This document shows, one piece after another, positions 5,337 through 24,080 of a stretch of 64,000 nucleotides of DNA. Location of the stretch: IMG/VR virus record IMGVR_UViG_3300032294_002797, positions 159,303 to 223,302 of that record, one strand, 5' to 3'. The first letter of the stretch is position 1. Every line of letters begins with the position of its first letter. The notes under the pieces were generated by a model. That model did no database searches and was not told where the DNA came from. It was given only the letters and a program-made list of their open reading frames with translations. Made by a program: the position numbers and the translations under genes.

Positions 5337-6040
5337 TATAATCCAAACCTTCCTTTTGAAGCATTATAATTTTGTAATATTTCGCTAGTACTTAATAATT
5401 TATTATAAATAGAAAAATTACTAATCAACATATTGCTATAACAATACCCGCAATTAACAGTATATGCCCCAAGTCTTAATAAATTAGTTAAATTAAATAC
5501 AGCTGGCATAAGATTAGAAAATGTCAATATGCCATTCCTATAAGTATAGATTATTTGAGTAGTATTACTATATGTAATAGTAAGATAGGTCCAAGTATTG
5601 ATAATACTAGTTGCATTAGAACTTATGCTCAAATATTTTGCAGTGGTGCTATTCGATCTGGCGGATACATCTAATCTATTTGTATTTCCATTAGTATACA
5701 TATTAATATAATCTCCATAGCCGCTGCTAATTTCGAAAATCATTCTAGTTGTTGGACATGGACATGAGCCGCCTCCGACTACCAAATTATTTATCCATAA
5801 ATTGATAGAAAAATCTGTATTTATTGTATAATTATTATCCGATGTAATGTATTGATTAGTTCCATTTAAAGTGAATCTTCCATTACTAAAAGAAGGATTA
5901 TTAGATAAAGTAAAATGTCTATTATTACCGCTAATATCGTACCATTTATTCCCACTTCCTGGATAACTACGGTTGTTAGCAGCGTCCAGATGTAGAGTTA
6001 AATTATTTGTAATTATATCTGGGCCGCCATATATGCTCAT
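5336..6040 (-). CDS. LamG/ConA-like lectin domain protein (start probably 6040)
   Basis: LHLDAAN..SYPGSG..WYDISGN, IYNKLLSTSEILQNYNA; ATGA overlap with upstream stop at 6037-6040. Confidence 0.8.
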   Translation of the reverse strand: MSIYGGPDIITNNLTLHLDAANNRSYPGSGNKWYDISGNNRHFTLSNNPSFSNGRFTLNGTNQYITSDNNYTINTDFSINLWINNLVVGGGSCPCPTTRMIFEISSGYGDYINMYTNGNTNRLDVSARSNSTTAKYLSISSNATSIINTWTYLTITYSNTTQIIYTYRNGILTFSNLMPAVFNLTNLLRLGAYTVNCGYCYSNMLISNFSIYNKLLSTSEILQNYNASKGRFGL

Positions 6041-8955
6041 AAGGAGTATTCTGTAACTATTTGAGGAATATCTTTTCTTAATCCGGTAAATGTCCAAAAG
6101 AAATCATATAGTCCATTAGTATCACAACCAACAGTAAACGTATTGTGTGGTATCTTAATGTCTTGTATATAAAGAATCTTATTGTGTTTATAGTTAGTAA
6201 TTTGTATATTAATACTATCGTCATCCAAAACTAAATCTTTAATATAGTCTGGTAAATTTACTACACAAACTCCATTTACAACAGTATCTTTTCCTGTTAA
6301 TCGTACTCCGTGATATGGGCTTTCTAATGAGCCGTATTCTAAAACATATCCAGGTTTTGATGGATGGCTTATTTTAAAGCTTTTAGTTGTAGCAGAAAAG
6401 GCTCCCGATACTGCCACATCTCCTACTACATCTAGTTTAACGGCTGGATTATTTTTACCAATTCCTACATTTCCTATATTATCTATTCTTAATCTTTCGG
6501 TGCCGCTAGTACTAATAGACAAGGTATTGGCTGATGGAGAAAATAAGCCTGTATCTGGATCATTGATAAATTCGAATGATGGTAAAGAAGAGGTACCCGA
6601 TCCTGCTATAAATGATCCTGTACAACTAACGTCTCCATTAAATGTACTGTTTCCAACTACATGAAATTTAGTTGAGGGTACTCCTGTTCCTATTCCAATA
6701 TTGCCGCCACTAGAAATCACAAAATCATTTTGATTAAATCTTCCTCCAATTATACTATCGTCACTAAATACTTCAAATATTGGCAAACCAGCATTATTAT
6801 TAACGCTCATTAAGCTACCGCTAAGACTGTCTACAACGCTGAATAGACTACCATTAGTACCTTCAACATTAAATACCAATTCTCCGCTAGTAGTAGAATA
6901 AACGTCTAATAAAGCATTAGGGACTAATCCAGTGGTTGAGGCAAATAATCCTGTTCCCACAACATGTAAACGTCCACTAGGAGCTGTTGTTCCTACTCCT
7001 AAATTACCAACCGACGTTAATCTCATTCTTTCGGTAGCAGCCGGAGAAAATCTGATATGTTGGTTAGCCGTTCCTGCATTATAACTATTTCCTATTTCAA
7101 CCTCTTGACTAAATGCTAAAACTCTTATTCTTCCAGCTTGACCTTCTAAATTAATTGTATTATCTCCACCCCTAACTATTAAACTATCACTAGTATCATT
7201 ATATAACCTATTATATGTTAGCGGTACTGCCGTACCTGATCGTGATATGTATAAAGAACCTTGAGAATAAGAATCTCCAAAAATATGTAAAAGACCACTT
7301 GGCGTTAATGTATTTATCCCAACAGCTCCAGCAAAATAGGCTCCTCCAGACGCATTAATATTAGAAAACATTATAGACCCATCTGCATTTCTGGTTTCTA
7401 TAGCGTTAGCAGTTTGACTGGCTACCTGTGATATGTAGATTCCTCTTCGACTAGGAATAACTGTGCTTACCTCCAATGAGGCGAGTCCGTTCCATGTTGT
7501 TTTAGAAACAGCTAATGTTGTATTATTAATAAATCCAGTTGAACCAAAAGATAAAAATCTTGTACCGCTTCCTTGACTAACATAAAAAGCATTCACGCTG
7601 TCTGTTCTAACATCTAAATCAAACGTTGGATTATTAGTGCCTATTCCTATTCTAGATGATACTATCCCGGTACCCAAAACATGTAGTTGTCCACTTGGTG
7701 TTGATGTTCCTATGCCAAAACTACCAGACGGTGTAATTCTAGCTTTTTCGCTACCGCCGGGATTAAACATAACATAAGCATTAGCAAATGCTGATCCTAT
7801 TTCGACTCCAACGCTTGATGATGACAGAACAAGTTTACCTCCATCTCCTTGTAGCTGTAAAGAATTACTTCCTCCAGCTAAAGTAAGATTTTGAGCACCA
7901 GCTCTTTGAATACTGCATCTATTTCTACTAGTGTCGGCGTAGTCTGTATCGTTTTGATTAAAATATAAAATTCCTTGAATTCTAGATTCTCCATTAATAT
8001 CCAAAACAGAGGATGGAGCAACCCGATTAACGGCTATGCCTGAAGAAAATATTCCCGTTCCTATAACATGTAATTGGCTACTAGGACTAGTTGTTCCTAT
8101 GCCCATATGTCCATTATTTCTGTTTATATGCAAAACATCAGACCAGCTTGTAGATCCTGCTCTGCGAGCAAGTCTAAGATTACCGTCAGTTGCTCTATCA
8201 AAAAATCCCCATCCATTATTTCCACTAGACAATTGAATATTATTGGTACTAGCTAAGAATGGAACTGAATCGTTATTGCCGACTCCGATGTGGGTCTTTA
8301 CTACATTGCTTGGATTACTTAAGAGTACGTAGCTATTATTAGCTACAATTCTTTCTATATGAAGTGCCCCGCTAGGATTAGTCGTTCCTATACCAACACT
8401 AGTATCATTATCAAAAATAACTCCACTAGTTAAACTATTACTTCCATTCCATCGTGAAACATAACCACTAATTCCAATTCCGGTAGTTAAATTAGCTGGA
8501 AATAGTCCACTTACGCTAGAGTTAAAATTAGTAATATTTGATGACGTATGAGTATGGCCGCTGACACTAATAGGAATATTGTTTAATAACCATGGTCCGC
8601 TAAAATTTAAAACTTCGTCGCCTTCGCTTGCTTCTATCGAGCCAGAAACATTATTACCATTAAAATATATTCTATGTATTCCATTAGAATTTATGGCTGG
8701 ATTTATTTCTATTCCACCTTCATAATAAGAAGGAGCATAAATCGATAAATTTTGAAATTGACCACTAGCTGGAGATATCAAACCAGAGGAACTAGCAACA
8801 TTTTTTAAACTATTCCAATTAGATACTCCGTCACCAATCTTTAAAATATTATTGGATAGATCATATCCTGGCTCTCCACTAGCTAGTATAGGATTGGTAC
8901 TGCTCCACTGAGATCCTGTTCCTTTTCGTATTGTAATGGCCGTATTAACTGGCAT
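6037..8955 (-). CDS. long tail fibre, Mtd_N-like N-terminus, GIGTTxP repeats
   Basis: IRKGTGSQWSSTNPILASGEPGYD..LKIGDG; repeated GNxGIGT motifs; C-terminal KSFKISHP..LESP domain. Confidence 0.85.
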   Translation of the reverse strand: MPVNTAITIRKGTGSQWSSTNPILASGEPGYDLSNNILKIGDGVSNWNSLKNVASSSGLISPASGQFQNLSIYAPSYYEGGIEINPAINSNGIHRIYFNGNNVSGSIEASEGDEVLNFSGPWLLNNIPISVSGHTHTSSNITNFNSSVSGLFPANLTTGIGISGYVSRWNGSNSLTSGVIFDNDTSVGIGTTNPSGALHIERIVANNSYVLLSNPSNVVKTHIGVGNNDSVPFLASTNNIQLSSGNNGWGFFDRATDGNLRLARRAGSTSWSDVLHINRNNGHMGIGTTSPSSQLHVIGTGIFSSGIAVNRVAPSSVLDINGESRIQGILYFNQNDTDYADTSRNRCSIQRAGAQNLTLAGGSNSLQLQGDGGKLVLSSSSVGVEIGSAFANAYVMFNPGGSEKARITPSGSFGIGTSTPSGQLHVLGTGIVSSRIGIGTNNPTFDLDVRTDSVNAFYVSQGSGTRFLSFGSTGFINNTTLAVSKTTWNGLASLEVSTVIPSRRGIYISQVASQTANAIETRNADGSIMFSNINASGGAYFAGAVGINTLTPSGLLHIFGDSYSQGSLYISRSGTAVPLTYNRLYNDTSDSLIVRGGDNTINLEGQAGRIRVLAFSQEVEIGNSYNAGTANQHIRFSPAATERMRLTSVGNLGVGTTAPSGRLHVVGTGLFASTTGLVPNALLDVYSTTSGELVFNVEGTNGSLFSVVDSLSGSLMSVNNNAGLPIFEVFSDDSIIGGRFNQNDFVISSGGNIGIGTGVPSTKFHVVGNSTFNGDVSCTGSFIAGSGTSSLPSFEFINDPDTGLFSPSANTLSISTSGTERLRIDNIGNVGIGKNNPAVKLDVVGDVAVSGAFSATTKSFKISHPSKPGYVLEYGSLESPYHGVRLTGKDTVVNGVCVVNLPDYIKDLVLDDDSINIQITNYKHNKILYIQDIKIPHNTFTVGCDTNGLYDFFWTFTGLRKDIPQIVTEYSL

Positions 8956-8992
8956 AAGAATAATCCATAGTAATTTACTTTATAATAATCAA

Positions 8993-9313
8993 CTATCTAA
9001 TAGCTAGCAAACTATTTAATTTATTTTCTAAATCATTACCAAACCTATTCAAAATCTCTTGGGTTATCTGCTCGTCTGTTAAACTATCCAAAGATTGATA
9101 ATTAGTTCCTGAGTATAAAAATATGGGTATTTTAGCCGGTTTTACCCAAACTTTAATAATACTATTTTCACTATCGTCTACCAATAATACATTTAATATT
9201 GAAGATATTTGTTCGGTATATCCACCGGAGCTATTTTGAACTTGTAGAGTAATACTTTGTTCTAAATTAATAATTAAATTTTTATTCATGTTAATATGTA
9301 CAACTCCCATCAT
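8993..9313 (-). CDS. hypothetical tail-associated protein
   Basis: Resembles 10164..10487 (LYSGTNY..I..R.GND versus LWKDTDY..RINELLGDN). Confidence 0.55.
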   Translation of the reverse strand: MMGVVHINMNKNLIINLEQSITLQVQNSSGGYTEQISSILNVLLVDDSENSIIKVWVKPAKIPIFLYSGTNYQSLDSLTDEQITQEILNRFGNDLENKLNSLLAIR

Positions 9314-10160
9314 TCACATTAGCATTAGGATCATAATTGGTGGCGAATGAATCAGTACAACCATAATATAAACACCCATAAGTATAATCTGCAACAGAAT
9401 CATAGACTGGGTTACCAATCACATTACAGCCAACTCTGTATACTGATACTAAGTCGTTCGTGAAGCCATAGGTTCTTTTAGTTTTGTAATAAATTTTACT
9501 TATTTCATCAACTGATAGTGCTCTATTATAAAGGGCCGTTCGACCTATGCTCATGCTAAAGCCGGTATCTCCTATTTGTATATTATATTCATTATCAACT
9601 ATTGTTCCTGTAGCAGCTGTTCTATAAATATACAACTTATTATCATATCCAATATATAAATAGTGATTAAAACCCGATACAGAAGAATCGTAAGAATGAC
9701 CAATAAAATTCCAACCCAACACACTAGGATGAAAGCCCATACCATTTCTCTGATCAGTATTAAAGTCTGCTAAGATAAAATTTCCTCCCATCCATTCTAC
9801 TATAAGTCCATAGTCATAGAAAGCTGGCTTGCCAAATAACGTCTTAAACGAACCGGTAAGTTCATAATCGAATTTAGCCCAAATAATTTGAGTAAAACTA
9901 TCACTCATAACTAATGAGCTATTATGATTTACAGTAATATTATTCGACTGTAGGGGTAGTGCTGGACCATTCGTAGAAACTGAGCTAGAAATAGTTCCAT
10001 GATTATTAAGTCCACTCAAATCATAAATAGTATCTGATCCATTACTATTAAAACTATTACTATTAGCAGGATCAAAATAAAGCACAAGCCCGTTACTATT
10101 AGTTAGTATGGGGTCATATAAATTACACTGATTAGCTTTAGTTTTAATTCCATTTAACAT
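9291..10160 (-). CDS. LamG-domain protein with C-terminal GCTD..NY..DGSC Cys motif
   Basis: GLVLYFDPAN, YNRALSVDEI, YGCTDSFATNYDPNANVNDGSCTY. Confidence 0.75.
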   Translation of the reverse strand: MLNGIKTKANQCNLYDPILTNSNGLVLYFDPANSNSFNSNGSDTIYDLSGLNNHGTISSSVSTNGPALPLQSNNITVNHNSSLVMSDSFTQIIWAKFDYELTGSFKTLFGKPAFYDYGLIVEWMGGNFILADFNTDQRNGMGFHPSVLGWNFIGHSYDSSVSGFNHYLYIGYDNKLYIYRTAATGTIVDNEYNIQIGDTGFSMSIGRTALYNRALSVDEISKIYYKTKRTYGFTNDLVSVYRVGCNVIGNPVYDSVADYTYGCLYYGCTDSFATNYDPNANVNDGSCTY

Positions 10161-10163
10161 TAT

Positions 10164-10487
10164 TTATCTCTGTGGTGGAACAAATAAACCTTCTAATACT
10201 CCCACAGGATTGTCTCCTAATAATTCATTTATTCGATCTTCTACCTGAGCTGTAGTATAATCGCCAATGTTGGTATAGTCGGTATCTTTCCATAAAACTA
10301 AAGGATAAGGACAAGGAACTATTCTAACCATACAGGTTTTACGCTTAATATTATCAAATATAGTATAATCTAGTTCATTAATAGTGATAGGTTTTTGAAC
10401 TCTTACTTCTCCATTAGAGCGAGTGATGGTTGGAGGTTGTATAGTTATTGGGTTGTTTAGATTCATTTTTGATTCCTTTATGGACAA
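10164..10487 (-). CDS. hypothetical tail-associated protein
   Basis: Intact ORF in the operon; resembles 8993..9313. Confidence 0.6.
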   Translation of the reverse strand: MSIKESKMNLNNPITIQPPTITRSNGEVRVQKPITINELDYTIFDNIKRKTCMVRIVPCPYPLVLWKDTDYTNIGDYTTAQVEDRINELLGDNPVGVLEGLFVPPQR

Positions 10488-11743
10488 GATGGTGGTGGGT
10501 TGGGAACAAAGGTTATGGCCGTGCCGAAGCCGGTTACGTTGCAGGCAGAGCCTGTGAAGGTGGCGGTGCCGGTCACTGTGGCTTCGTTGTACGAACTGTC
10601 GTTGAAATTCGCGTCTCCGGTGACGGTGCTGGGGTTGCCGTTGTACGAACTGTCATTAAACGTCGCGTCTCCGGTGCCGCCGCTGTAGTTGTACGCGGTG
10701 TCGTTGAATGTCGCGTCTCCGGTGACGGTGCCGTCGTTGTACGAACTGTTGTTGAACGTCGCATTGCCACTGACGGTGCCGCTGTAGTAGTTGTACGCGG
10801 TGTCGTTGAACGTCGCGTTGCCGGCGACGATCAAGGTGTTGCTCGAACTGTTGTTGAACGTAGCGTTGCCAGTGACGGTGCCGTTGTTGGACGCATTATC
10901 GTTGAACGTCGCGTCTACATTGACGGTGCTAAAGTTGCCCGAACTGTCGTTGAAATTACCGTCGCCAGATACGGTGTCGTAGTTACTCGAACTGTCGTTG
11001 AAAGTACCGTTGCCAGTGATCGTGCCGTCATTATTAGAACTTCCATTAAACGTTGCGTTGCCGTTGATAGTGCCAAAGAAGATGCTCGAATTGTCGTTAA
11101 AAGTAGCGTCTCCATTAATGGTACTGAAGTTAATAGAATTGTTGTTAAAAGTCGCATCTCCATTGACCGTACCACCATTGTTCTGCGAGTTATCATTGAA
11201 AATAGCGTTTCCATTGACCGTGGCGGTGTTGTACGAATAATCGTTGAATGTCACTTCCCCATAAGCGTAACTGAAGTTACGCGAAATATCGTTAAATGTC
11301 GGGTTGTTAGCGTCGCCTTGGTTGGACGAATAACTATTGAAAGCAGCATTACTGACGCTTCCGAAGTTTTGTGAGCTGTTGTTAAAATGCGCATCGCCAG
11401 TGATGGTGCCGACGTTGATCGAATTGTCATTGAAATTAGCGTTGCCAGTAACGGTAATGGATACGAAAAAGAAAAAGTTGCCATTAATAGTAAAGTTCAC
11501 CAGTGTCGGCTCGCTGGCACTATTGGTATTAACAGAGGCGCTCGCAATTACACTATCTATACTTCGTGGTAAATGAGTGGCAGGAACACTAAATTGATCA
11601 TCCAACCACCAATTACCCAAAGTATTCCAATCATTATCAACAGCACCATTAAAGTACAAAACCTTACTCGTTGCTACTCTTACCTTAGCAGCGCCGTTGA
11701 CTATTTTGAATTTATTTCCCCCTACAGCTCGGAAAAAGCTCAT
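10478..11743 (-). CDS. beta-solenoid repeat adhesin-like protein
   Basis: About 19 copies of a ~16-aa unit GxATFNDxSxNxGTVT; ATGA-coupled to upstream fibre gene. Confidence 0.75.
   Translation of the reverse strand: MSFFRAVGGNKFKIVNGAAKVRVATSKVLYFNGAVDNDWNTLGNWWLDDQFSVPATHLPRSIDSVIASASVNTNSASEPTLVNFTINGNFFFFVSITVTGNANFNDNSINVGTITGDAHFNNSSQNFGSVSNAAFNSYSSNQGDANNPTFNDISRNFSYAYGEVTFNDYSYNTATVNGNAIFNDNSQNNGGTVNGDATFNNNSINFSTINGDATFNDNSSIFFGTINGNATFNGSSNNDGTITGNGTFNDSSSNYDTVSGDGNFNDSSGNFSTVNVDATFNDNASNNGTVTGNATFNNSSSNTLIVAGNATFNDTAYNYYSGTVSGNATFNNSSYNDGTVTGDATFNDTAYNYSGGTGDATFNDSSYNGNPSTVTGDANFNDSSYNEATVTGTATFTGSACNVTGFGTAITFVPNPPPSCP
10545..11450 (-). repeat. imperfect ~48-bp coding tandem repeat, GC-rich
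   Basis: Recurring GGC AAC GCG ACG TTC AAC GAC AGT TCG nnC AAC nnC GGC ACC GTC. Confidence 0.9.
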
Positions 11744-13782
11744 GGGGTACCTCCATCAACAAACTGAATAATAATATTAGCAGACCCATCAAAATTAGTG
11801 CCGTTAATAGTACGAGGAGTTTGTAGTGCTGTTGCTGTACTAGCATTACCAGTTAAGGCGCCCACAAAAGTTGTACTAGATACACTAGTTAAACCGCTCA
11901 CACTAACTACCGTATCACCAAGATTAATAGCAGTTGATCCGATAGTCACACGACTATTTTCTAGTTGAGAGTTACCAACACCAGATGCTCTGATACTAAC
12001 AGCACCGCTTGTTACACTAAAGTCACCACTATCAAAACTAGCTATACCTTTGACAGTTGTACTAGCATCAGGAATTAAACCAGAAGCAACGCTGGTAACT
12101 CGTCCATAACTATCAGTGGTTACTCCAACAACCACATTACCAGAACCACTATCAGTTCTACTAACTGTAGCAAGGTCAATATTGTCAGCATTTACAACGA
12201 TTCGACTACTACTAGCTGTTCCAACATTAAGAGTATTTCCACTCTTAACCATACCATCGCCCGCTGTAATTTGACCAGCACCGCTAAACTGAGCAAAATT
12301 CAAAGCGGTTCCAACAATGCCGTTAATAGTAATAGGATCGTTTGTAGTTAAAACCCAACCGCTATCAGCATTGACAGTACCTTCTGTTACAAAAACAAAC
12401 ATACCAGCCGTAACCTCTTCGCTACTATTTGCATCAGCAGCTCTGCTCCAAGATCCACTTGCGGCTACCCAGATACCGTTAATTCTTGGTTCTGCATGAT
12501 TTTTTACCAGTACTCTATCGCCTGCTACTAATGTGACTCCATCTATAGTTTGCAAACCGCTAACACTTAAAGAGCTATCAGCTGATGTTGTAGCAACCCT
12601 AACACTTTGCTTAACGTCTAATCCTGCTCTTGCAGCATCAACATACGCTTTTGTTGCAGCATCACTATCATCTGTTGGTGTTGCTAAATTAGTGATCTTT
12701 TGGCTATTTAACGACACACTACCTGTTGGAGCTGCCATTTGATCCAAACGAGATGTTCTTACCTGAGAGTCAAAGTTATTAATATTACTAGCAACTAAAC
12801 CACTACCTACTAAAGTAAGATTACCGCTAATGCTTGCATTATTACGAACTATTAAATTATTAGTATTAATAGTTTGCGCAGCATATACTTCTCCTAAAGA
12901 GCTAACAGAAAAAACGCCATCTCCAACATCAACAGCATTAACTCGAAGTAGACCCGTGGCGTTGATACCTGTTGCACCCAGATTCCCAATATACAATCCA
13001 GATGCCCTAACTTCTCCAACGTCTCCATAAATTACTGCTTTATTGGCAACAATAGTTTCGGGAGCGGACCCATCTAGCAAATTAAGTTCGCTAGCGCTAG
13101 AAGTCAAGTCTGTAATATCCGACACTTGAATAGTTGGATCACTTAAACTTACAATATAATTACCACCAGAGTGAGACAAACTAATACCACTACCAGCAGT
13201 TAATGGACTACTAACAGTAAGAGTATTATTTCCACTATTATATACAATATCAACACCAGATCCGGCCACAATACTAGTACTAACAGCACTATCAATCAGA
13301 CTGTTAACCCCACTAGCAAAATTTGTAATATCAGACACTTGAATGGTAGGATCACTAAGACTAATGGTTGTATAACCAGTAGTATCATTATAACTAACGG
13401 CAATACCACTAACGCCAGTAACCGATACCCCAATAATATCTTGTATAGTTTCACTATTAATAAGAGTATTAACAGCGCTAGCAAAATCATTAACTTGGCT
13501 AGATTGAATACCTGTTACACTAATAGTAATAGGCACTCCGGTTACAGAAGAAAATGATAATCCAATACCACTAGCTCCTATTAAGTCTGTATTACTAGGT
13601 AATATGGATGAGTATGCTAAACTATTCCATGGAGTTAGTCCATCTCCAATTTTATATCTTTTTGTGGTGGTATCTAGTCCCCATTCACCGGCGCTTAATG
13701 TAGGATTAAGTTGGCTCCAACCACTACCATTAGGAAGAGTAAGTTCTCCTCTACGCATTTGAATTCTTGTTTGAACAGCCAT
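11740..13782 (-). CDS. tail fibre, Mtd_N-like N-terminus
   Basis: IQMRRG..NPTLSAGEWGLDT..KIGDG; DAATKAYVD; IDGVTLVAGDRVLVKN; TPRTINGTNFDGSANI. Confidence 0.85.
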   Translation of the reverse strand: MAVQTRIQMRRGELTLPNGSGWSQLNPTLSAGEWGLDTTTKRYKIGDGLTPWNSLAYSSILPSNTDLIGASGIGLSFSSVTGVPITISVTGIQSSQVNDFASAVNTLINSETIQDIIGVSVTGVSGIAVSYNDTTGYTTISLSDPTIQVSDITNFASGVNSLIDSAVSTSIVAGSGVDIVYNSGNNTLTVSSPLTAGSGISLSHSGGNYIVSLSDPTIQVSDITDLTSSASELNLLDGSAPETIVANKAVIYGDVGEVRASGLYIGNLGATGINATGLLRVNAVDVGDGVFSVSSLGEVYAAQTINTNNLIVRNNASISGNLTLVGSGLVASNINNFDSQVRTSRLDQMAAPTGSVSLNSQKITNLATPTDDSDAATKAYVDAARAGLDVKQSVRVATTSADSSLSVSGLQTIDGVTLVAGDRVLVKNHAEPRINGIWVAASGSWSRAADANSSEEVTAGMFVFVTEGTVNADSGWVLTTNDPITINGIVGTALNFAQFSGAGQITAGDGMVKSGNTLNVGTASSSRIVVNADNIDLATVSRTDSGSGNVVVGVTTDSYGRVTSVASGLIPDASTTVKGIASFDSGDFSVTSGAVSIRASGVGNSQLENSRVTIGSTAINLGDTVVSVSGLTSVSSTTFVGALTGNASTATALQTPRTINGTNFDGSANIIIQFVDGGTP

Positions 13783-13819
13783 GATCGGTGCCTTTCTTTG
13801 GGAAATTATTTATTTAACA

Positions 13820-14098
13820 TTATGGGGATCCACAATCAAATTCATATTCGTCTAAGTATTCATCTAAGCCTTCTATTCTAGCCACATCTAAATTACCAAC
13901 TATTTTACTCATAGGAATATTGTCTGGTAAGTCACTAACTAATATTTTTTCAGTATTAACTATTTCCAAATTAAAACTATCAAAAAGTTCAATTTCAATA
14001 TTATTAACAATACTACCAAAAGAAGTTTCAACTTCTAATATATTTGTTGTAGGCTCCAATATTTCTAAGATAAAATCACTCATATGATTTATACACAA
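13820..14098 (-). CDS. acidic hypothetical virion protein
   Basis: ORF in structural operon ending DCGSP. Confidence 0.55.
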   Translation of the reverse strand: MCINHMSDFILEILEPTTNILEVETSFGSIVNNIEIELFDSFNLEIVNTEKILVSDLPDNIPMSKIVGNLDVARIEGLDEYLDEYEFDCGSP

Positions 14099-16576: not shown

Positions 16577-17247
16577 TATTTAATTTTATTTTTGAGTATA
16601 TCGATATTAGGAAACTTTCTATCTCCAAGTACACCATCAGCAAACCCATACTCTACTGCTTCATTAGATTTTAAAATCCAATCACACTTATTTGCTAATT
16701 GAGAAGTAATATGTTTTCTTGCCATCATCTTTTTCCAATTTTTATTTTTAGCCATTTCACTTTCCATGCATCTATCCGTAAAAATATCTATCATTTTATC
16801 ACACTCATCTTCGTTCCATTTTACAGAACTAACGGCGGCTTTTGAGTGTTCTCCATCCAAACTAAAAGAACCGTAGTGTATCAACATTGTAGTATTGGGC
16901 ATCAAGATTCTTAAGCATGGAGATTGGAAGAGTACGCTACTAGATGATTCTACTTTGGCATAAGCTAAAATAGCAATTTTAGATTTGGAAAAACGCACTG
17001 TATCATACATACCTAAACAATCTTGCCAGTATCCGCCGGGTAGATGCATATGTACTAGAATCGGATCGTGAGACAATGTATTGAGATATCTAATATTCTT
17101 CTCAAATAAAACAGCTGACCTATAATCAACTCCGCTTTCTTCTTCTCCATCAATATATGAATGTAGATATACTTCTCTATTTTTTAGATCTAAACCAAAA
17201 TTATGAATATGGTTCAGCTCAGAGTCCGTGTTCAATGAATGATTCAT
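16576..17247 (-). CDS. clpP: ClpP-like protease subunit
   Basis: HLPGG, AKVESSSS (Ser), MLIHYG (His), CDWILKSNEAVEYGFADGV (Asp). Confidence 0.8.
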   Translation of the reverse strand: MNHSLNTDSELNHIHNFGLDLKNREVYLHSYIDGEEESGVDYRSAVLFEKNIRYLNTLSHDPILVHMHLPGGYWQDCLGMYDTVRFSKSKIAILAYAKVESSSSVLFQSPCLRILMPNTTMLIHYGSFSLDGEHSKAAVSSVKWNEDECDKMIDIFTDRCMESEMAKNKNWKKMMARKHITSQLANKCDWILKSNEAVEYGFADGVLGDRKFPNIDILKNKIK

Positions 17248-17702
17248 AATAATAATCCAGATAGGTAAGAATATATTGTTTGATTGATATTAGATAGTGT
17301 ATCGCTAGAGTTAAATAACTGGCCTATTCCTATGCGGAATCTATATCTTGTATACACATCTAAAACTTCCACCCCTTCATTATTCTCTATGATAGCGGCT
17401 ATTTTTGGCGTTAAATCGAAATTGGTATGCCCTATCCAAAAATTAAAAGAAGACCCTATATTATATTGATCATTATATGGCATCAGACCAAATGGCGTGA
17501 TAATAGCCTTAATATGTTTTTTTGCAAAGCTGTTTTCAGGCTCATCACTATGATCATTTGGATAGTGATCATCTTCGTTTATATCATCTATAAAGTCGGG
17601 AGATTTGACAAAATCTTCTGGAGATGAATATACAGACTCATCAGAAAATGGATCCTGCCACTTCTGCCAAACTATTTTAGGCGAAACTATTTTTGCATCC
17701 AT
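17244..17702 (-). CDS. hypothetical protein
   Basis: ATGA-coupled to clpP. Confidence 0.65.
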   Translation of the reverse strand: MDAKIVSPKIVWQKWQDPFSDESVYSSPEDFVKSPDFIDDINEDDHYPNDHSDEPENSFAKKHIKAIITPFGLMPYNDQYNIGSSFNFWIGHTNFDLTPKIAAIIENNEGVEVLDVYTRYRFRIGIGQLFNSSDTLSNINQTIYSYLSGLLL

Positions 17703-17709
17703 TATTGGT

Positions 17710-18135
17710 TTATGACGGTAAAAAACTTTTAAATACTTGTGATGGTCTAACTACCGGCATATTTTTCTCTGTGTTAGATTTTTGTTTTAGATAAGAAAGC
17801 TCCGTCAATTTATAATAAACATTCTGTGCAAAAAGTATATCATATGATTTATAACTTTTATAATTTTTGATAGTTGATATAATCTCTGATTCTAATAAAC
17901 CCTCATTAATAGCATCAAGCATTAAAGCATAATTATTAGATAGAGATAGTATTTGATCTTTATTATTTTCATTAAACTCTGGCCAATAGCATATTATATT
18001 GATAGTACCATCAATATTCATTTGTATATTTAAAGAACATGCTATATTTTTATTGGTTTTTTTATTATTCTGTTGTGAAAAGTGACCGAACAAATTTTGC
18101 AGAAATTTATACATACGCCATAGCCTTCCTTGCAA
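17710..18135 (-). CDS. hypothetical protein
   Basis: ORF in operon. Confidence 0.55.
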   Translation of the reverse strand: MQGRLWRMYKFLQNLFGHFSQQNNKKTNKNIACSLNIQMNIDGTINIICYWPEFNENNKDQILSLSNNYALMLDAINEGLLESEIISTIKNYKSYKSYDILFAQNVYYKLTELSYLKQKSNTEKNMPVVRPSQVFKSFLPS

Positions 18136-18484: not shown

Positions 18485-19067
18485 ATTGTCTGATCCTGGA
18501 TAGACCCTTTTGAATATTTTGTCTAATTGCTTCTCTAGTGACGCTGTATTTATTACCTATCTCTAGTAATGTCTTATTATTAAAATAATATTCATAGATT
18601 TGATCTTTTTGCTTATCAGACAAGATATCTGAATTCAAAATACATTCTATATATTTTGCTATCATATCTTTCTCTTCTTGTTCGGATACAATTTCAAAGG
18701 GATCAGACACTCCCTTGGTCTCTATATTTGATATATAGCTACGATTTTCCTTGTTATCGGAGGCATATTGATCCAGAGAATAATTGGTATTTTTCTTTTT
18801 ATAACGATTAGATAAATATGTTTTAATAGCCCATAAACCGCACTGATTACGATAAGAATACTTGGTTTTCGATTTACCATTGTATCCCGTGCGAGTCTTG
18901 TCCCATTTCCAATCTGCTATCATTATAGCTTCTGCAATTTCTGATATTGCTTCTTCATTAGATAATAATTCTTGTCTTAAATTATTGTAAAATGACGGAG
19001 CAAACTTAGAAATAATTTTTTTAGCTAAATTTATATAGGTATCCAGAGTCTCAAATTGCTGTTCCAT
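18477..19067 (-). CDS. RNA polymerase sigma70-family factor
   Basis: Region 4 HTH LSDKQKDQIYEYY..TLLEIGNKYSVTREAIRQ; region-2-like N-terminus. Confidence 0.85.
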   Translation of the reverse strand: MEQQFETLDTYINLAKKIISKFAPSFYNNLRQELLSNEEAISEIAEAIMIADWKWDKTRTGYNGKSKTKYSYRNQCGLWAIKTYLSNRYKKKNTNYSLDQYASDNKENRSYISNIETKGVSDPFEIVSEQEEKDMIAKYIECILNSDILSDKQKDQIYEYYFNNKTLLEIGNKYSVTREAIRQNIQKGLSRIRQYA

Positions 19068-19096
19068 TTAATGTCCTTATAAAAGTAAATTTTGGC

Positions 19097-19537
19097 TTAT
19101 TTTTTCTGAGTCTTTTTTGTCAGTTCTTCCCATTGTTTGGGATTAGGTCTATCTTTATCTCCGGGCTTGGCTGGTCTGTATTTTTTACCCTCTCTTTCTC
19201 TTTTTTTACGGATGTTTTCCCACAGACCCGGGCGAGAACTACCAGTAGATTCATCGTCACTTTCTGTGACATACATCACAAAATCATGGATGGTTCTAAC
19301 ATAATCCTCAGTTATGGCAATTTTACCCTGAAGCCAGCTCTCTGTCAAGTTTTCTTTTACGTGCGGAGAGTCAATAGAATTTATTATATTATTGATATTA
19401 GCCACCATGGCTTTTAAAGATCCTAGACTCATTTCATAGAAATCTTCTTTGTATTCTTGTAGATCATCATTAGTCGAAGACAGTACCTGATCGATATGTG
19501 ATAGAATTTCATTCTTACGATTGGTCATTATTATCAC
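19097..19537 (-). CDS. hypothetical phage protein
   Basis: ESWLQGKI and PGLWENIRKKR motifs, which I recall from large-phage proteins. Confidence 0.6.
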   Translation of the reverse strand: MIIMTNRKNEILSHIDQVLSSTNDDLQEYKEDFYEMSLGSLKAMVANINNIINSIDSPHVKENLTESWLQGKIAITEDYVRTIHDFVMYVTESDDESTGSSRPGLWENIRKKREREGKKYRPAKPGDKDRPNPKQWEELTKKTQKK

Positions 19538-20207
19538 CTTTAGTATATTGTATTAAGTCGTTAAAAAGATTTTTTACTAATAGCACTGATGCGTCATTAT
19601 CGCTAGGAAAATGAACTCCTTGCTTAACTCTAGCTAACATTACTTTGCGAGTAGCTTCTGCTAATTCATCTTTCAAATGAGGGAATTCGACAGTTAATAG
19701 TTGTTCGGCAAGTGCCGCGTATGCTACATGACCCGAGGGATAAGCTGGCGTATGATGAGTTCCAGTGTGTATTACATCTATATTAAGATTATAGAATTCA
19801 GCTATTTGATTAGGTCTGGGTCTATTAAATAGTATTTTTAAATCAGACACAATCTCATACAATAAAGCATATAGTGTATCAAATTTGTTTTGGGGAAAAG
19901 GTAGACTATATTTTTTAAGTATCGTCTTATAAATAATTAATGGATCCTCATCTATTAAGAGAATAGTTTCTTTGATATTAAGAGGGATATTTGAAGTTTC
20001 TTTAATAAGATGCTGAATTTCTGCCTTAGTAATATCACTAGAATTACTTGGAGGACAATCTATTAGATCTATATATTTAAAAGGTAAATAAGATTCTAAT
20101 TCTGTAGGTCTACTCTTATGTATATAATTTTTATATACTAAATTATCTAAATTGGATTGTTTTTTATTAACAATAATATCTTGTATTTTTTTGATTAAAC
20201 TGAACAT
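19515..20207 (-). CDS. PAP2-superfamily acid phosphatase
   Basis: K....RPRP, YPSGH, R...GVHFPSD. Confidence 0.9.
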   Translation of the reverse strand: MFSLIKKIQDIIVNKKQSNLDNLVYKNYIHKSRPTELESYLPFKYIDLIDCPPSNSSDITKAEIQHLIKETSNIPLNIKETILLIDEDPLIIYKTILKKYSLPFPQNKFDTLYALLYEIVSDLKILFNRPRPNQIAEFYNLNIDVIHTGTHHTPAYPSGHVAYAALAEQLLTVEFPHLKDELAEATRKVMLARVKQGVHFPSDNDASVLLVKNLFNDLIQYTKGDNNDQS

Positions 20208-20212
20208 ATTTA

Positions 20213-20773
20213 TTATACTTGTAATGTTAAAAAATTATCTATTCCCATTTGTTCTATCAATTTAAGATATCCTTCATATAGTTTAATGCCATCTTCACTA
20301 CCTTGAAGTAGCGGGATCATAGTATTGGCCGTAAGTTCGTCTCCTACGGCTCGTGCAGCAACAATAGTGGCTCGTTCTGCTGTCGATGCTTCTCTAACTG
20401 AGGCTAGATTGTAATTAATCATTGCCACCATATCATGTCTTGTCCATCTTGGTAGAGATACATTAAGTGGCTGGTAATCAACATCAAAAAACTCTAAACG
20501 TGTTAAGTTTATCATAGCATGTTCATGTTCTTCCAAAGCATCAGCTTTAATAATTGCTGCTAATTTTTTATAGCCCCATCTTTCAAGATGCACTGCTTGT
20601 GCCGATAATACTGTTGTTTGTTGCCAGTGAATATTAAGAGATTTTTTAAGAAGTTCTATCACCGTTTCTGTAGAATATTTTGTGACTTCTTGAGCTTGTG
20701 TGTTTTCTGATTTGTTGTCCATATTAGATATTTTGCTTTCTTGATCTTGTAATAGTTCTGATATAGGTTTCAT
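20213..20773 (-). CDS. bfr: bacterioferritin-like protein (degenerate ferroxidase centre)
   Basis: WGYKKLA, EEHEH, GDELT, IEQMGIDNFL follow the Bfr pattern. Confidence 0.75.
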   Translation of the reverse strand: MKPISELLQDQESKISNMDNKSENTQAQEVTKYSTETVIELLKKSLNIHWQQTTVLSAQAVHLERWGYKKLAAIIKADALEEHEHAMINLTRLEFFDVDYQPLNVSLPRWTRHDMVAMINYNLASVREASTAERATIVAARAVGDELTANTMIPLLQGSEDGIKLYEGYLKLIEQMGIDNFLTLQV

Positions 20774-20777
20774 ATTA

Positions 20778-21338
20778 TCACCAAGCTTTGCATGACCAGT
20801 ATCGGGCTTTATACTTAGGTCCAGGATTATCGCAGTTGTGTCGTGCTCTAAAACTTTTACGTCTTTCGGGAATATTTTTTTTAATTTTCATATTAGGATC
20901 ACCAAATCTAACTATTATAACCTTGCCTTTTTCATTTTTAACATAAACCGCAGATTTTTTAGGTCCATCAGGAGTTCTGAAAGGTTTATTAAGAGTTACT
21001 TTCCGTCCTTGATATTCTGATGCTATCAGATGAGAAATATCATATTCTTCTATTTCTTCACCAAAGTCAATATAGTCTTCTTCTTTAGGAATCAATAGAT
21101 TTGATAATGTAAGAAGTTCTTCTGGATCATCACAATCCTCACAATCATAGGCTAGGCTGAAACCTAATATCTCCATGACCTGATCAATCAAACTACTCTT
21201 AGATTTTTTGGTTTGACCCAAACATACGGACACTCTTTGTTTGGTGTCTTTATAGTCTTTTTTCATTGTTTCGTCACTCATGCAACGACTAACAAATTTT
21301 TGACTATCTTCATCTTTTCTTGGCTTTGGAATTGGCAT
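20778..21338 (-). CDS. conserved phage protein (basic FRARH.C..YWSC domain)
   Basis: RFGDPNM..RRKSFRARHNCD..ARYWSCKAW. Confidence 0.65.
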   Translation of the reverse strand: MPIPKPRKDEDSQKFVSRCMSDETMKKDYKDTKQRVSVCLGQTKKSKSSLIDQVMEILGFSLAYDCEDCDDPEELLTLSNLLIPKEEDYIDFGEEIEEYDISHLIASEYQGRKVTLNKPFRTPDGPKKSAVYVKNEKGKVIIVRFGDPNMKIKKNIPERRKSFRARHNCDNPGPKYKARYWSCKAW

Positions 21339-21392
21339 AGAGTATCTCCTAGATAAATATTAATACACCAATAAAATAACTGAATTTGACCA

Positions 21393-22463: not shown

Positions 22464-22469
22464 AGTAAC

Positions 22470-23594: not shown

Positions 23595-23600
23595 ATAATA

Positions 23601-24080
23601 TTACTTATCTTCCTTGTGAATAGTATTCTTTCCTTCTGGAAATTGATATAATACTCCGTAACTTATAAAAATTTCTTGGTTTTCTCGTATTGGTTGAGTT
23701 GCTTTACATCTACCTATAAGTTGTGTGTAATCTATTACAATCTCTGCATTGGGGTCGTCTTGATGATTATATATTCCTCCATACCCTAATCTTAGACATA
23801 AAACTTCTCCGTGTCTTTTGCATTCCTCACACTCGCATTTTTTTGCAACAGAGTACTCTAGGACTCTGGTATCTCCTTGGTAATGTGTGCGGAAATACAA
23901 CGGCACCAAAGGAAATATTTCTATCACATCGCCTATAGAAAAATTTTTCTTTGCAAAAACCCCTATACCATGAACATCCGAAGCTTTAACATAAACTAAT
24001 TCTGAGGAGCATGCTATTTCAGGTAGTTTTGTAGACTCTGGTATATTTGGTATGGCTTTGGTTTTTGTTGTATCTAGCAT
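23601..24080 (-). CDS. SET-domain protein-lysine methyltransferase
   Basis: HGIGVFA, YNHQDDPN, EIFISYG..Y. Confidence 0.85.
   Translation of the reverse strand: MLDTTKTKAIPNIPESTKLPEIACSSELVYVKASDVHGIGVFAKKNFSIGDVIEIFPLVPLYFRTHYQGDTRVLEYSVAKKCECEECKRHGEVLCLRLGYGGIYNHQDDPNAEIVIDYTQLIGRCKATQPIRENQEIFISYGVLYQFPEGKNTIHKEDK

What the first reader, a model, noticed from the sequence alone, without database searches (positions are those of the whole stretch)
10478..11530. GC-rich 48-bp repeat cassette grafted onto an AT-rich virion gene
Seen: the 5' part of the gene has genome-like composition (21/60 GC at 11581-11640), the repeat part is GC-rich (35/60 at 10561-10620), and the neighbouring gene is AT-rich (14/60 at 10321-10380). 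There are about 19 units with fixed F-N and N ladders, a TxT/TxN face, and two hypervariable codons that are mostly NNC (TAC, AGC, GGC, TCC, GAC, ACC, AAC). Inference: a recently imported beta-solenoid receptor-binding module whose length and surface vary by repeat shuffling. The NNC pattern also fits DGR-type AAC mutagenesis but could be plain GC3 bias. TxT ladders recall ice-binding solenoids.
Basis: partly seen in the sequence, partly recalled or inferred. Interest (0 to 1): 0.62.

Follow-up and report, generated by a model that had tools for sequence, protein, structure and literature searches.

The report
GC-rich beta-helix repeats in phage fibre gene
An AT-rich lake phage carries, in its tail-fibre cluster, a 421-residue protein of 19 sixteen-residue turns predicted to form a beta-helix; its unusually GC-rich 3' part is a swapped-in segment of an unnamed, phage-only gene family, not the product of a mutagenic diversity system.

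Summary
Window 10478-11743 (-) encodes a 421-aa protein with 19 tandem units, mostly 16 aa (48 bp). Third-codon-position GC (GC3) steps from 0.29 to 0.53 to 0.78 along the gene. The 3' array is the most GC-rich 432 bp of the 223-kb, 35% GC phage genome.

- **Fold:** AlphaFold gives a confident parallel beta-helix (pLDDT 88.5). The best structural matches are autotransporter adhesin passengers and phage tailspikes.
- **Swapped cassette:** related phages keep the flanks and the first 66 codons but carry other, shorter arrays. The first GC3 step falls at that same breakpoint.
- **Not a DGR (diversity-generating retroelement):** the genome has no reverse transcriptase and no template copy. The AAC codons are the invariant ladder, and the units differ by indels.
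- **"Recent import" is not shown:** no donor above 78% identity was found. Most copies in other AT-rich phages are also GC3-rich (0.72-0.84), some are sharp mosaics, and some are fully AT-adapted.
- **Nearest DNA:** the GC-rich part and C-terminal cap match genes of GC-rich phages best.

Best reading: a mosaic, horizontally exchanged fibre or adhesin module. Selection or biased conversion that keeps GC3 high remains a live rival. The family has no Pfam, PHROG or NCBIfam model and is absent from GenBank phages.

The parts
10478..11743 (-). Gene for the 421-aa repeat protein. Its ATG overlaps the stop of the upstream fibre gene (ATGA).
   Evidence: ORF list. More than 637 homologues support this frame. 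The AF2 model is confident.
11546..11743 (-). Resident 5' part, codons 1-66. GC3 is 0.29. It is shared with relatives and is the putative attachment end.
   Evidence: Contigs of X2 (about 96% identity) and X6 (about 90%) align down to 11545/11543 and then diverge. P0001 is nearly identical up to residue 66. A GC3 change point lies at codon 66. The best DNA hit is the syntenic orthologue L026 at 81%.
11453..11665 (-). Trp-rich N-terminal cap of the helix (LYFNGAVDxDWNTLGNWW...), aa 27-97. It is the family's signature domain.
   Evidence: Alignment A2 has invariant Y, N, W, NWW, LP and D columns. pLDDT is 91-98 over this stretch.
11021..11452 (-). Repeat units 1-9 (aa 98-241). They are degenerate, with GC3 of 0.44-0.62.
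   Evidence: Unit table. Mean pairwise core identity is 60%. Best outside hits are 68-70%, to copies in phage loci with flank GC 0.35-0.46.
10523..11020 (-). Repeat units 10-19 (aa 242-407). They are close to consensus, with GC3 of 0.62-1.00. This is the most GC-rich DNA of the genome.
   Evidence: Mean pairwise core identity is 73%. Two-unit periodicity is visible (units 14/16 at 90%, 13/15 at 87%). The second GC3 change point is at codon 263, window about 10955. Best DNA hits are genes of phages with flank GC 0.63-0.64, at 76-77%.
10478..10576 (-). C-terminal cap, TGTATFTGSACN...FVPNPPPSCP, with two conserved cysteines, followed by the stop codon.
   Evidence: The same cap is present in P0001, P0003, P0009, P0011, P0019, L012, L043 and L046. 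A disulfide between the two cysteines is an inference.
11740..13782 (-). Upstream 680-aa tail-fibre-like gene, translationally coupled to the repeat gene.
   Evidence: Pfam Mtd_N at 4.6e-06. PHROG hits to tail fibre and virion structural families. GC3 is 0.18.
10164..10487 (-). Downstream 107-aa ORF that overlaps the gene's end by 10 nt. It marks the 3' edge of the variable cassette and is conserved next to the orthologue.
   Evidence: L026 carries a 104-aa counterpart at about 75% DNA identity. Contigs of relatives re-align at 10215/10239-10466. GC3 is 0.21.

Best explanation
The gene encodes a single-chain, probably right-handed, parallel beta-helix. Each turn is one 16-residue unit, and there are 19 turns.
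- **Core (inferred from the sequence pattern):** Phe and Val/Ile stack inside, and Asn ladders hold the turns.
- **Ends:** a Trp-rich N-terminal cap and a Cys-containing C-terminal cap close the helix.
- **Surface (inferred):** one face carries T-x-T/N/S. The variable residues (unit positions 12, 14 and 15, plus insertions) line one edge.

It is made from the tail-fibre operon of a large uncultured lake phage. It most likely serves as a rigid fibre or adhesin module for host-surface recognition.

The GC-rich 3' array is explained by history, not by targeted mutagenesis. The gene is a recombinant mosaic:
- Codons 1-66 are resident and AT-rich, and close relatives share them.
- Everything downstream, to the stop codon, is an exchangeable cassette drawn from a phage-only gene family.
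- That family circulates between phages of very different GC content (flank GC 0.33-0.68).
- The conserved N-terminal cap, the 48-bp units and the C-terminal cap probably supply the homology for crossovers.

The 3' half still carries the codon style of GC-rich lineages. The middle units are an older or different segment closer to the host genome's composition.

**Shown:** the fold prediction, the mosaic GC3 steps, the coincidence of a GC3 step with the homology breakpoint, the allele replacement in relatives, the family's spread across GC classes, and the absence of DGR parts.

**Inferred:** virion location, receptor binding, direction and age of transfer, and the disulfide.
For: **Fold**
- AF2 mean pLDDT 88.5, pTM 0.85.
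- VIA-align: Vag8 passenger Z 21.0 (rmsd 2.7, 294 aligned), TibA 18.2, Ag43b 17.5, phage APK16 tailspike 17.4, cyanophage Pam1 tailspike 16.3.
- Left-handed hexapeptide helices align only at rmsd above 10.

**Context**
- Mtd_N tail-fibre genes lie on both sides, and the start overlaps the upstream stop as ATGA.
- In an unrelated GC-rich phage (L043) the family gene also sits in the structural module, between the portal and virion proteins.

**Mosaic**
- GC3 is 0.29 | 0.53 | 0.78, with change points at codons 66 and 263.
- Contigs from two other samples keep 11545-13900 at 90-96% identity. They then jump to other or shorter arrays and re-align after about 10466.
- P0001 (270 aa) and P0003 (264 aa) share the N-terminus and the C-terminal cap but have about 10 units.

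**Segment affinities**
- The 5' 198 nt match the syntenic orthologue best (81%).
- The GC-rich part and C-terminal cap match genes of phages with flank GC 0.63-0.64 best (76-77%).

**Family pattern**
- Copies in AT-rich phages have repeat GC3 ranging from 0.17 to 0.84.
- Some are sharp mosaics. L013 goes from 0.12-0.34 to 0.72-0.84. L026 has a GC3-rich block in the middle.
- Homology between AT-rich and GC-rich phage loci is confined to this gene.
- N-domain tree: GC3-rich copies of AT-rich phages (L001, L010, L012) group with copies from GC-rich phages.

**Against expression-driven codon choice**
- Neighbouring fibre genes have GC3 of 0.18-0.22.
- The shift happens inside one gene.
Against: - No donor was found. 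The best identity anywhere is 76-78%, so transfer is old or the donors are unsampled.
- GC3-rich copies are the majority in AT-rich phages. Syntenic relatives that differ by 16-30% at the DNA level (L060/L079, L001/L012) are both GC3-rich. This could mean that GC3 is actively maintained rather than repeatedly imported.
- The tree nodes linking AT-phage and GC-phage copies have weak support, 81-88 ultrafast bootstrap.
- In this window the GC3 rise along the array is graded rather than one sharp step.
- No virion proteomics, binding data or host are available.
- Only contigs could be laid, not raw reads, so rare variants are invisible.
Confidence: 0.55

Rival explanations
1. High GC3 is an intrinsic, actively maintained property of this repeat family. 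One possible cause is selection, for example against A/T-rich slippery or promoter-like repeats: Tyr-Asn read as TAT AAT is a perfect -10 box, and here it is always TAC AAC. The other is GC-biased gene conversion among units. Under this view the gene is resident and no import is needed, and AT-rich copies are decayed or relaxed ones.
For: - Nine or more distinct AT-rich phage loci carry copies with GC3 of 0.72-0.84.
- Syntenic relatives that have diverged by 16-30% both keep high GC3.
- Gene GC stays at 0.53-0.60, whether the genome is 35% or 68% GC.
- Pooled over genes, units closer to the consensus have higher GC3 (rho 0.35).
- Units 10-19 are more alike than units 1-9, 73% against 60%.
- All nine Tyr codons in units 10-19 are TAC.
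- No donor was found.
Against: - Family members with GC3 of 0.17-0.36 exist and keep open frames (L075, L031, L048).
- In L001, L011 and L012 the non-repeat N-terminal domain is also GC3-rich, so the effect is not specific to repeats.
- Here the first GC3 step is at codon 66, a recombination breakpoint, and not at the first repeat, codon 98.
- Within genes there is no consistent link between consensus-likeness and GC3.
- Among synonymous differences between copies, strong-to-weak (G/C vs A/T) changes dominate and strong-to-strong (G vs C) changes are few. This is also what independent decay from a GC-rich ancestor would give.
Confidence: 0.3
2. A diversity-generating retroelement, or another targeted hypermutation system, diversifies the two variable codons.
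For: - Variable codons are often NNC.
- Neighbouring genes carry the Mtd_N domain, named after a DGR target protein.
Against: - No RVT_1 match in the 223-kb genome, which CheckV rates 100% complete. The same search rang in 3 control genomes.
- No template repeat or paralogue: blastn and tblastn of the gene hit only the gene itself.
- AAC is the invariant ladder codon, and conserved codons are NNC too.
- Units differ in length (15-18 aa).
- The fold is a beta-helix, not a C-type lectin.
- The source run gives a single form, and a related allele is invariant in 10 samples.
Confidence: 0.02
3. The GC-rich array is an assembly chimera that joins this phage to a homologous gene from a GC-rich phage in the same sample.
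For: - The record is a metagenome assembly.
- Homologous repeats from other phages occur in the same and in related samples.
Against: - An independent Logan assembly gives a 62-kb contig that covers 8900-13900 with 0 differences at uniform depth.
- The longest exact internal repeat is 24 bp, too short to mislead the assembler.
- The frame is intact across all junctions, and the model folds as one continuous helix.
- The same mosaic pattern recurs in independent contigs (L013 group, L026).
Confidence: 0.03
4. The T-x-T/N ladder is an ice-binding face, and the protein is a phage-borne ice-binding or antifreeze solenoid.
For: - The T-[VI]-[TNS] triplet recurs, with Thr at unit position 16 in 15 of 19 units.
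- The Marinomonas beta-helical antifreeze 3p4g matches at Z 13.7.
- Runs X5 and X6, which hold related sequence, are labelled freshwater and lake-water metagenomes.
Against: - A strict TxT is present in only about 8 of 19 turns.
- By eye, no Gly-rich Ca-binding turn motif of the MpAFP kind is present in the units.
- Adhesin passengers and tailspikes match much better, at Z 16-21.
- The position in a tail-fibre operon and the allele swapping fit host recognition.
Confidence: 0.05

Closest known systems
Passenger beta-helices of AIDA-type and other autotransporter adhesins (Vag8 7akv, TibA 4q1q, Ag43b 7kob)
   Same: A long, single-chain, three-faced parallel beta-helix built from short tandem repeats, with very few loops. 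VIA Z is 21.0, 18.2 and 17.5, with rmsd of 2.7-4.4 over 239-294 residues. These proteins act as surface adhesins.
   Different: - Sequence identity is only 9-11%.
- The unit here is 16 residues. By my recollection AIDA/TibA units are about 19 residues.
- The protein ends at residue 421 in a small Cys cap, leaving no room for a C-terminal translocator barrel.
- No Pfam autotransporter family matches.
- It is encoded by a phage in a fibre operon.
Phage tailspike and neck-appendage beta-helices (Acinetobacter phage APK16 gp47 8opz, cyanophage Pam1 tailspike 7eea, phi29 gp12 3gq7, Andhra 8egr)
   Same: Virion-borne parallel beta-helices used for host-surface recognition. Z is 14.9-17.6. They are likewise encoded among tail genes.
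   Different: - Tailspikes have wider turns with loops that form a catalytic groove, and they carry separate head-binding and trimerisation domains. This is a minimal helix of 16 residues per turn with no such domains.
- Sequence identity is 7-9%.
- Oligomeric state was not tested here.
Diversity-generating retroelement targets (Bordetella phage BPP-1 Mtd)
   Same: A hypervariable receptor-binding gene in a phage tail cluster. The neighbouring genes carry the Mtd_N domain.
   Different: There is no reverse transcriptase, no template repeat, no adenine-specific pattern and no C-type lectin fold.
Host recognition clusters of cyano- and pelagimyophages (PMC7029224)
   Same: A hypervariable island inside the structural region of large AT-rich aquatic phages. 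It holds tail fibres with Mtd domains together with glycosyltransferases. This window has the same ingredients.
   Different: In the passages retrieved, that paper does not describe this repeat family or a GC-rich cassette. This phage is only distantly related to cultured phages: its rIIA is at most 36% identical, and no Gp23 Pfam hit was found, although that search rang in no control genome either.
Beta-helical ice-binding proteins (MpAFP region IV 3p4g; insect TxT antifreezes)
   Same: Regular solenoids with ranks of Thr and Asx on one face. Z to 3p4g is 13.7.
   Different: By eye there is no Ca-binding turn motif. The Thr ranks are incomplete. Adhesin helices match more strongly. No assay has been done.
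Bactofilin (PF04519)
   Same: A small beta-helix of short repeats. A few family members (P0002, P0027, P0043) carry a precomputed PF04519 hit.
   Different: The window's protein has no PF04519 hit even at E 0.1. Bactofilins are cytoplasmic polymers, without the Trp-rich and Cys caps seen here.

Membership tests
Diversity-generating retroelement (DGR) target | A reverse transcriptase encoded nearby or elsewhere in the genome | tested here: not met
   PF00078 search of the whole 223,302-bp record (CheckV 100%) gave 0 matches. The control search rang in 3 genomes.
Diversity-generating retroelement (DGR) target | A template repeat near-identical to the variable region, differing at adenines | tested here: not met
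   blastn (word size 7) and tblastn of the gene against its own genome hit only the gene itself. Internal copies are 64-76% identical.
Diversity-generating retroelement (DGR) target | Variation confined to codons that are AAC/AAT in the template, with no indels | tested here: not met
   AAC codons form the conserved N ladders. Units vary in length from 15 to 18 aa.
Right-handed parallel beta-helix (fold class) | Stacked three-strand turns forming a continuous helix | tested here: met
   Prediction only. AF2 pLDDT is 88.5, with short strands that mostly recur about every 16 residues. VIA Z is 21.0 with rmsd 2.7 to 7akv_G. Handedness is inferred from which helices superpose: left-handed helices reach only rmsd above 10.
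Autotransporter adhesin (AIDA/TibA/Ag43 type) | A C-terminal beta-barrel translocator domain and a signal peptide | tested here: not met
   The protein ends at residue 421, straight after the last turn, in a 15-residue cap. No Pfam autotransporter family matches at E 0.1. Presence of a signal peptide was not formally predicted.
Phage tailspike depolymerase | A catalytic groove or residues on the helix, and trimer assembly domains | not tested
   Only fold similarity is available, Z 12-17. No pectate-lyase or other enzyme family was hit. Oligomeric state was not modelled.
Beta-helical ice-binding protein | A flat, regular array of TxT (or TxN with Ca2+) on every turn, plus ice-binding activity | tested here: inconclusive
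   The T-x-[TNS] triplet is present in most turns, but a strict TxT in only about 8 of 19. By eye there is no Gly-rich Ca-binding turn motif. Activity cannot be tested with these tools.
Bactofilin (PF04519) | A match to the family profile above the gathering score | tested here: not met
   Zero Pfam families for the protein at E up to 0.1.
The unnamed phage family itself (Trp-rich NWW cap plus GxATFNDSSYN units) | An N-terminal LYFNGAVDxxWxxLGNWW...LPxSxD cap, followed by about 16-aa F-N/N-ladder units | tested here: met
   More than 637 proteins at E of 0.001 or less, the best at 6.9e-77. Alignments A1 and A2 have invariant N44, W45 and near-invariant W39, W46, P59, D63. 78 viral loci were found.

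The most novel reading that the evidence does not exclude
The family may be a "GC-homeostatic" gene. Its arrays would be held at about 55-58% GC, with GC3 near 0.8, in phage genomes from 35% to 68% GC. The cause would be a force acting on the DNA or mRNA of the repeats, either GC-biased conversion among units or selection against AT-rich repeat DNA. That would make it a natural system for measuring such forces in viruses. On this reading the protein itself is a new minimal beta-helix adhesin, 16 residues per turn, specific to uncultured aquatic phages.
Probability: 0.25. Interest if true: 0.6.

Novelty: new variant of a known kind. Interest (0 to 1): 0.42.

Why it matters
Host-recognition modules decide which bacteria a phage can infect, and their exchange drives host-range change in nature.

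This gene gives a clean example of an exchangeable cassette:
- Its borders are mapped: codon 66 at the 5' end and the stop codon at the 3' end.
- A compositional scar marks the swapped part.
- It belongs to a large family (hundreds of members found here) that no curated database (Pfam, PHROGs, NCBIfam) names and that no GenBank phage carries.

The family crosses phage lineages of very different base composition. It can therefore serve as a tracer of gene flow between phages of different hosts in lakes.

If the GC3 excess turns out to be maintained rather than inherited, it would be a rare, testable case of non-mutational control of base composition in a virus.

In practical terms, the family deserves a profile model, so that such genes stop being labelled "hypothetical".

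Tried and rejected
**Searches that found nothing**
- blastn and tblastn of the gene, and tblastn of its N-domain alone, against 50,697 GenBank phages: no match.
- Pfam, PHROGs and NCBIfam: no family for this protein.
- ESM Atlas by features: only unnamed viral clusters, at a score of 0.78, which is only a lead.
- Foldseek against PDB: nothing at E of 0.001 or less. VIA-align was needed instead. BFVD gave only uncharacterised or "parallel beta-helix repeat" phage proteins.
- Literature search for the repeat motif: only an OCR artefact.
- The Pfam Gp23 search gave no match, but it rang in no control genome either, so it is uninformative.
- The promoter and terminator scan gave counts no higher than in shuffled sequence.

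**Donor hunt**
- blastn of gene segments against 136 fetched loci, including a scan of JGI metagenome contigs, gave a best identity of 78%.
- DNA of the closest orthologue, P0001, could not be fetched because the sample file is too large.

**Tests without enough power**
- A SNP-polarity test on near-identical copies found 0-1 SNPs inside the genes.
- A within-gene link between consensus-likeness and GC3 was inconsistent.
- A synonymous-difference test could not separate saturation under bias from shared ancestry.

**Rejected or set aside**
- The scan of 185,579 species genomes gave only 14 loci, all in MAGs. Several are long contigs labelled as CPR (candidate phyla radiation) bacteria and are probably mis-binned phage, so a cellular origin was rejected as unsupported.
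- The long antisense ORF 10448-11374 (+) was rejected as a by-product of stop-free GC3-rich repeats.
- Translational selection through phage tRNAs was not followed further. The phage does encode tRNA-Asn(GTT) and tRNA-Asp(GTC), but each reads both synonymous codons, and other fibre genes stay AT3-rich.
- An alignment-based viral scan with A1 failed for lack of conserved columns. The N-domain alignment A2 was used instead.

Full report
**1. What is there**

Window 10478..11743 (minus strand) is a 421-aa ORF. Its ATG overlaps the stop of the upstream 680-aa gene (ATGA), and its last 10 nt overlap the start of a 107-aa ORF. The neighbours at 11740-13782 and 6037-8955 carry the Pfam Mtd_N domain and hit PHROG tail-fibre families. 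The window also holds rIIA, a DNA ligase and glycosyltransferases.

The window is the last 64 kb of a 223,302-bp viral record that CheckV rates 100% complete. Genome GC is 34.9%. rIIA is at most 36% identical to any GenBank phage. Runs that hold related sequence are freshwater and lake metagenomes. So this is a large, uncultured lake phage of unknown host. The layout resembles the "host recognition cluster" described for aquatic myophages (PMC7029224).

**2.

Anchoring on the F-N core gives 19 units of 15-18 aa, mostly 16 aa = 48 bp. They span aa 98-407 = window 11452..10523. TRF reports period 48 and higher-order periods of 96/102 bp.

Within a unit:
- G3, A5, T6, F7, N8, S11, N13 and T16 are conserved.
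- Positions 12 and 14-15 vary and carry the length changes.

The GC excess is synonymous:
- GC1 and GC2 stay flat while GC3 climbs from about 0.45 to 0.8-1.0.
- Maximum-likelihood change points lie at codons 66 and 263, giving GC3 of 0.29 | 0.53 | 0.78. The single change point (codon 238) was matched in 0 of 500 permutations; the two-change-point model was not permuted.
- The last 432 bp of the array are the most GC-rich 432 bp of the genome, at 56.9% against a mean of 34.9% and sd of 4.8%.
- The gene has the highest GC3 of 168 ORFs: 0.59 against a median of 0.25.
- The adjacent fibre genes have GC3 of 0.18-0.22.

In units 10-19 the C- or G-ending codon wins for every common residue, conserved or variable. 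The genome uses these same codons at 7-21%. The NNC pattern is therefore plain GC3 bias within this segment, not a mark of the two variable codons.

**3. Not a DGR, and no sign of fast shuffling**

- The genome has no RVT_1 match, although the search rang in control genomes.
- The gene's DNA and protein hit nothing else in the genome, so there is no template repeat and no paralogue.
- AAC is the invariant ladder codon, and the units differ by indels.
- Only contigs could be laid. The probable source run gives one 62-kb contig with 0 differences and no alternative repeat number.
- A related allele (the L001 group) is identical in 10 metagenome samples, while its flanks carry 7 SNPs.
- The longest exact internal repeat is 24 bp, so misassembly is unlikely.

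**4. The protein**

No Pfam, PHROG or NCBIfam family matches.

AlphaFold2 with a 36-sequence alignment gives mean pLDDT 88.5 and pTM 0.85. Residues 20-130 and 160-400 are mostly at 90 or above, and short strands mostly recur about every 16 residues.

Foldseek finds nothing significant in the PDB. VIA-align gives:

| Match | Z | Notes |
|---|---|---|
| Vag8 passenger (7akv) | 21.0 | rmsd 2.7, 294 residues aligned |
| TibA | 18.2 | |
| Phage Andhra upper tail | 17.6 | |
| Ag43b | 17.5 | |
| Phage APK16 tailspike | 17.4 | |
| Cyanophage Pam1 tailspike | 16.3 | |
| phi29 gp12 | 14.9 | |
| MpAFP | 13.7 | |
| Left-handed hexapeptide helices | - | superpose only at rmsd above 10 |

I read this as a minimal right-handed parallel beta-helix with one unit per turn.
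- **Core (inference from the pattern):** F7, V/I1 and A5 point inward, and N8 and N13 form the ladders.
- **N-terminal cap:** the Trp-rich segment LYFNGAVDxDWNTLGNWW...LPRSxDSVI, aa 27-97, with pLDDT of 91-98.
- **C-terminal cap:** TGTATFTGSACN...FVPNPPPSCP. It has two conserved cysteines and recurs in many relatives. A disulfide is an inference.

The first roughly 20 residues are modelled with low confidence and are conserved only in close orthologues. They plausibly attach the protein to the fibre or virion (inference).

**5. The family**

- The word search finds more than 637 relatives, the best at 52-54% identity. Nearly all have no name. A few are fused to other modules (PG-binding, laminin-G-like, collagen, FGE-sulfatase domains), or carry two or three NWW caps.
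- Viral-contig scans gave about 100 loci.
- In 185,579 species genomes there are only 14 loci, all in MAGs. Several are long contigs labelled as CPR (candidate phyla radiation) bacteria, which I take for mis-binned phage.
- GenBank phages have none.
- In an unrelated phage of 63% GC (L043) the gene lies between the portal and virion structural genes.

The family is in practice phage-only and structural-module-associated.

**6. Why GC-rich?**

*(a) The cassette is swapped between close relatives.*
- Contigs from another sample of the same study (X2) match 11545-13900 at about 96%. A contig from a different lake study (X6) matches 11543-12298 at about 90%.
- Both then jump to other or shorter arrays and re-align from 10215/10239 to 10466.
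- P0001 is nearly identical to residue 66 and then differs, with about 10 units and 270 aa in all. P0003, the syntenic orthologue L026, has 264 aa.
- The homology breakpoint at codon 66 coincides with the first GC3 change point.

*(b) Segment affinities differ.*
- The 5' 198 nt match L026 best (81%).
- Units 1-9 match copies in phage loci with flank GC 0.35-0.46 best (68-70%).
- The GC-rich part and the C-terminal cap match genes of phages with flank GC 0.63-0.64 best (76-77%).

*(c) Across the family the same pattern recurs.*
- In phages with flank GC 0.34-0.38, repeat GC3 is 0.72-0.84 in L001, L010, L011, L012, L027 (two genes), L041, L060 and L079.
- It is intermediate and sharply mosaic in L013 (0.12-0.34, then 0.72-0.84) and in L026 (a GC3-rich block in the middle).
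- It is low in L048 (0.36), L031 (0.23, flank GC 0.41) and L075 (0.17).
- Homology between AT-rich and GC-rich phage loci is confined to this gene, at 74-78% DNA identity over 600-760 bp.
- In an N-domain tree the GC3-rich copies of AT-rich phages L001, L010 and L012 group with copies from GC-rich phages, though support is weak.

Together this favours a gene that moves between phage lineages and recombines inside itself. The window's allele would be a three-part mosaic.

**7. What weakens "recent import"**

- No donor above 78% was found in viral contigs, fetched loci or one JGI metagenome scan.
- Syntenic relatives that differ by 16-30% (L060/L079, L001/L012) are both GC3-rich. It leaves room for a force that keeps GC3 high, either selection on the repeat DNA or mRNA or GC-biased conversion.
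- I could not separate the two. The SNP polarity test lacked SNPs, and the synonymous-difference test was ambiguous.
- Against a purely intrinsic force: AT-adapted family members exist. Non-repeat N-domains are GC3-rich in some copies. Here the step sits at a recombination breakpoint rather than at the first repeat.

**8. Verdict**

- The beta-solenoid and grafted-cassette ideas are supported.
- "Recent" import is not shown.
- DGR is refuted as far as sequence allows.
- The ice-binding idea is untested and unlikely.

The object is a new, unnamed family of a known fold class. It plays a familiar role as a mosaic host-recognition module, and it carries an unexplained family-wide GC3 excess that is worth a targeted test.

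Noticed in passing
window 8956-10239: Contigs of related phages from two studies join 8956 directly to 10215/10239. They therefore lack the ORFs 8993-9313 (106 aa) and 9291-10160 (289 aa, with a Cys-rich C-terminal YGCTD...NYDPNANVNDGSCTY motif). This is a second indel hot spot in the fibre cluster.
   Followed up: partly
window 10164-10487 and 8993-9313 (both on the minus strand): Two small ORFs of about 106 aa, each just downstream of a fibre-cluster gene, are weak paralogues (24% identity, E 2e-05 for the pair). No family matches either. They might be fibre assembly helpers, which is a guess. The first is conserved next to the orthologue in L026.
   Followed up: partly
genome C1:16950-32000 (outside the window): A second GC-rich island. 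It holds 9 tRNA genes (Lys, Glu, Ile, Ser, Asn, Gln, Thr, Asp, Arg, at 18993-22652) and several ORFs with GC3 of 0.4-0.59, for example 17050-17997 and 23248-23619. The repeat gene is therefore not the only compositionally foreign DNA in this phage.
   Followed up: partly
window 10448-11374 (+), and other frames of the array: The GC3-rich array is free of stop codons in several frames, which produces a 308-aa antisense ORF and others. The same happens in L001. I take these as by-products of the codon choice, not as genes.
   Followed up: partly
L010 and L011 (IMGVR_UViG_3300031951_000022, both contig ends): In this 157.7-kb contig, family genes run off both ends, so the array may span the contig's break point. 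The L011 copy interleaves the 16-aa units with a repeated module of about 60 aa (TASSYIGNPAGGTINGTVTFSSASPVSFTVNN..WSADTSDWVF...). The same module appears in P0032, P0089, P0104 and L022.
   Followed up: no
L001-L009 and L020; L013-L019 and L024: Two alleles of the family gene recur unchanged in 10 and 8 viral contigs, respectively, from different metagenome samples. Across both groups there is only one SNP inside the genes. The L001 and L013 groups share the upstream region and gene start at 88.7% identity, but one gene is fully GC3-rich and the other is a mosaic.
   Followed up: partly
L108, L110, L112, L113, L115 (MAGs labelled Saccharibacteria); L104-L106 (Pirellulaceae MAG): The only "cellular" genomes with the family's N-domain are MAGs. 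They include contigs of 156-160 kb with 37-40% GC, which look like phage genomes binned as CPR (candidate phyla radiation) bacteria.
   Followed up: no
C-termini of family proteins (P0002, P0004, P0051, P0089, P0102, L001, L013): The family has two alternative C-termini. One is the Cys cap ...FVP[ND]PPPSCP, as in this window. The other is a tail ending in RGINGSSILGV[IL] / GINNSNILGMI. This may mark two ways of docking or processing.
   Followed up: no
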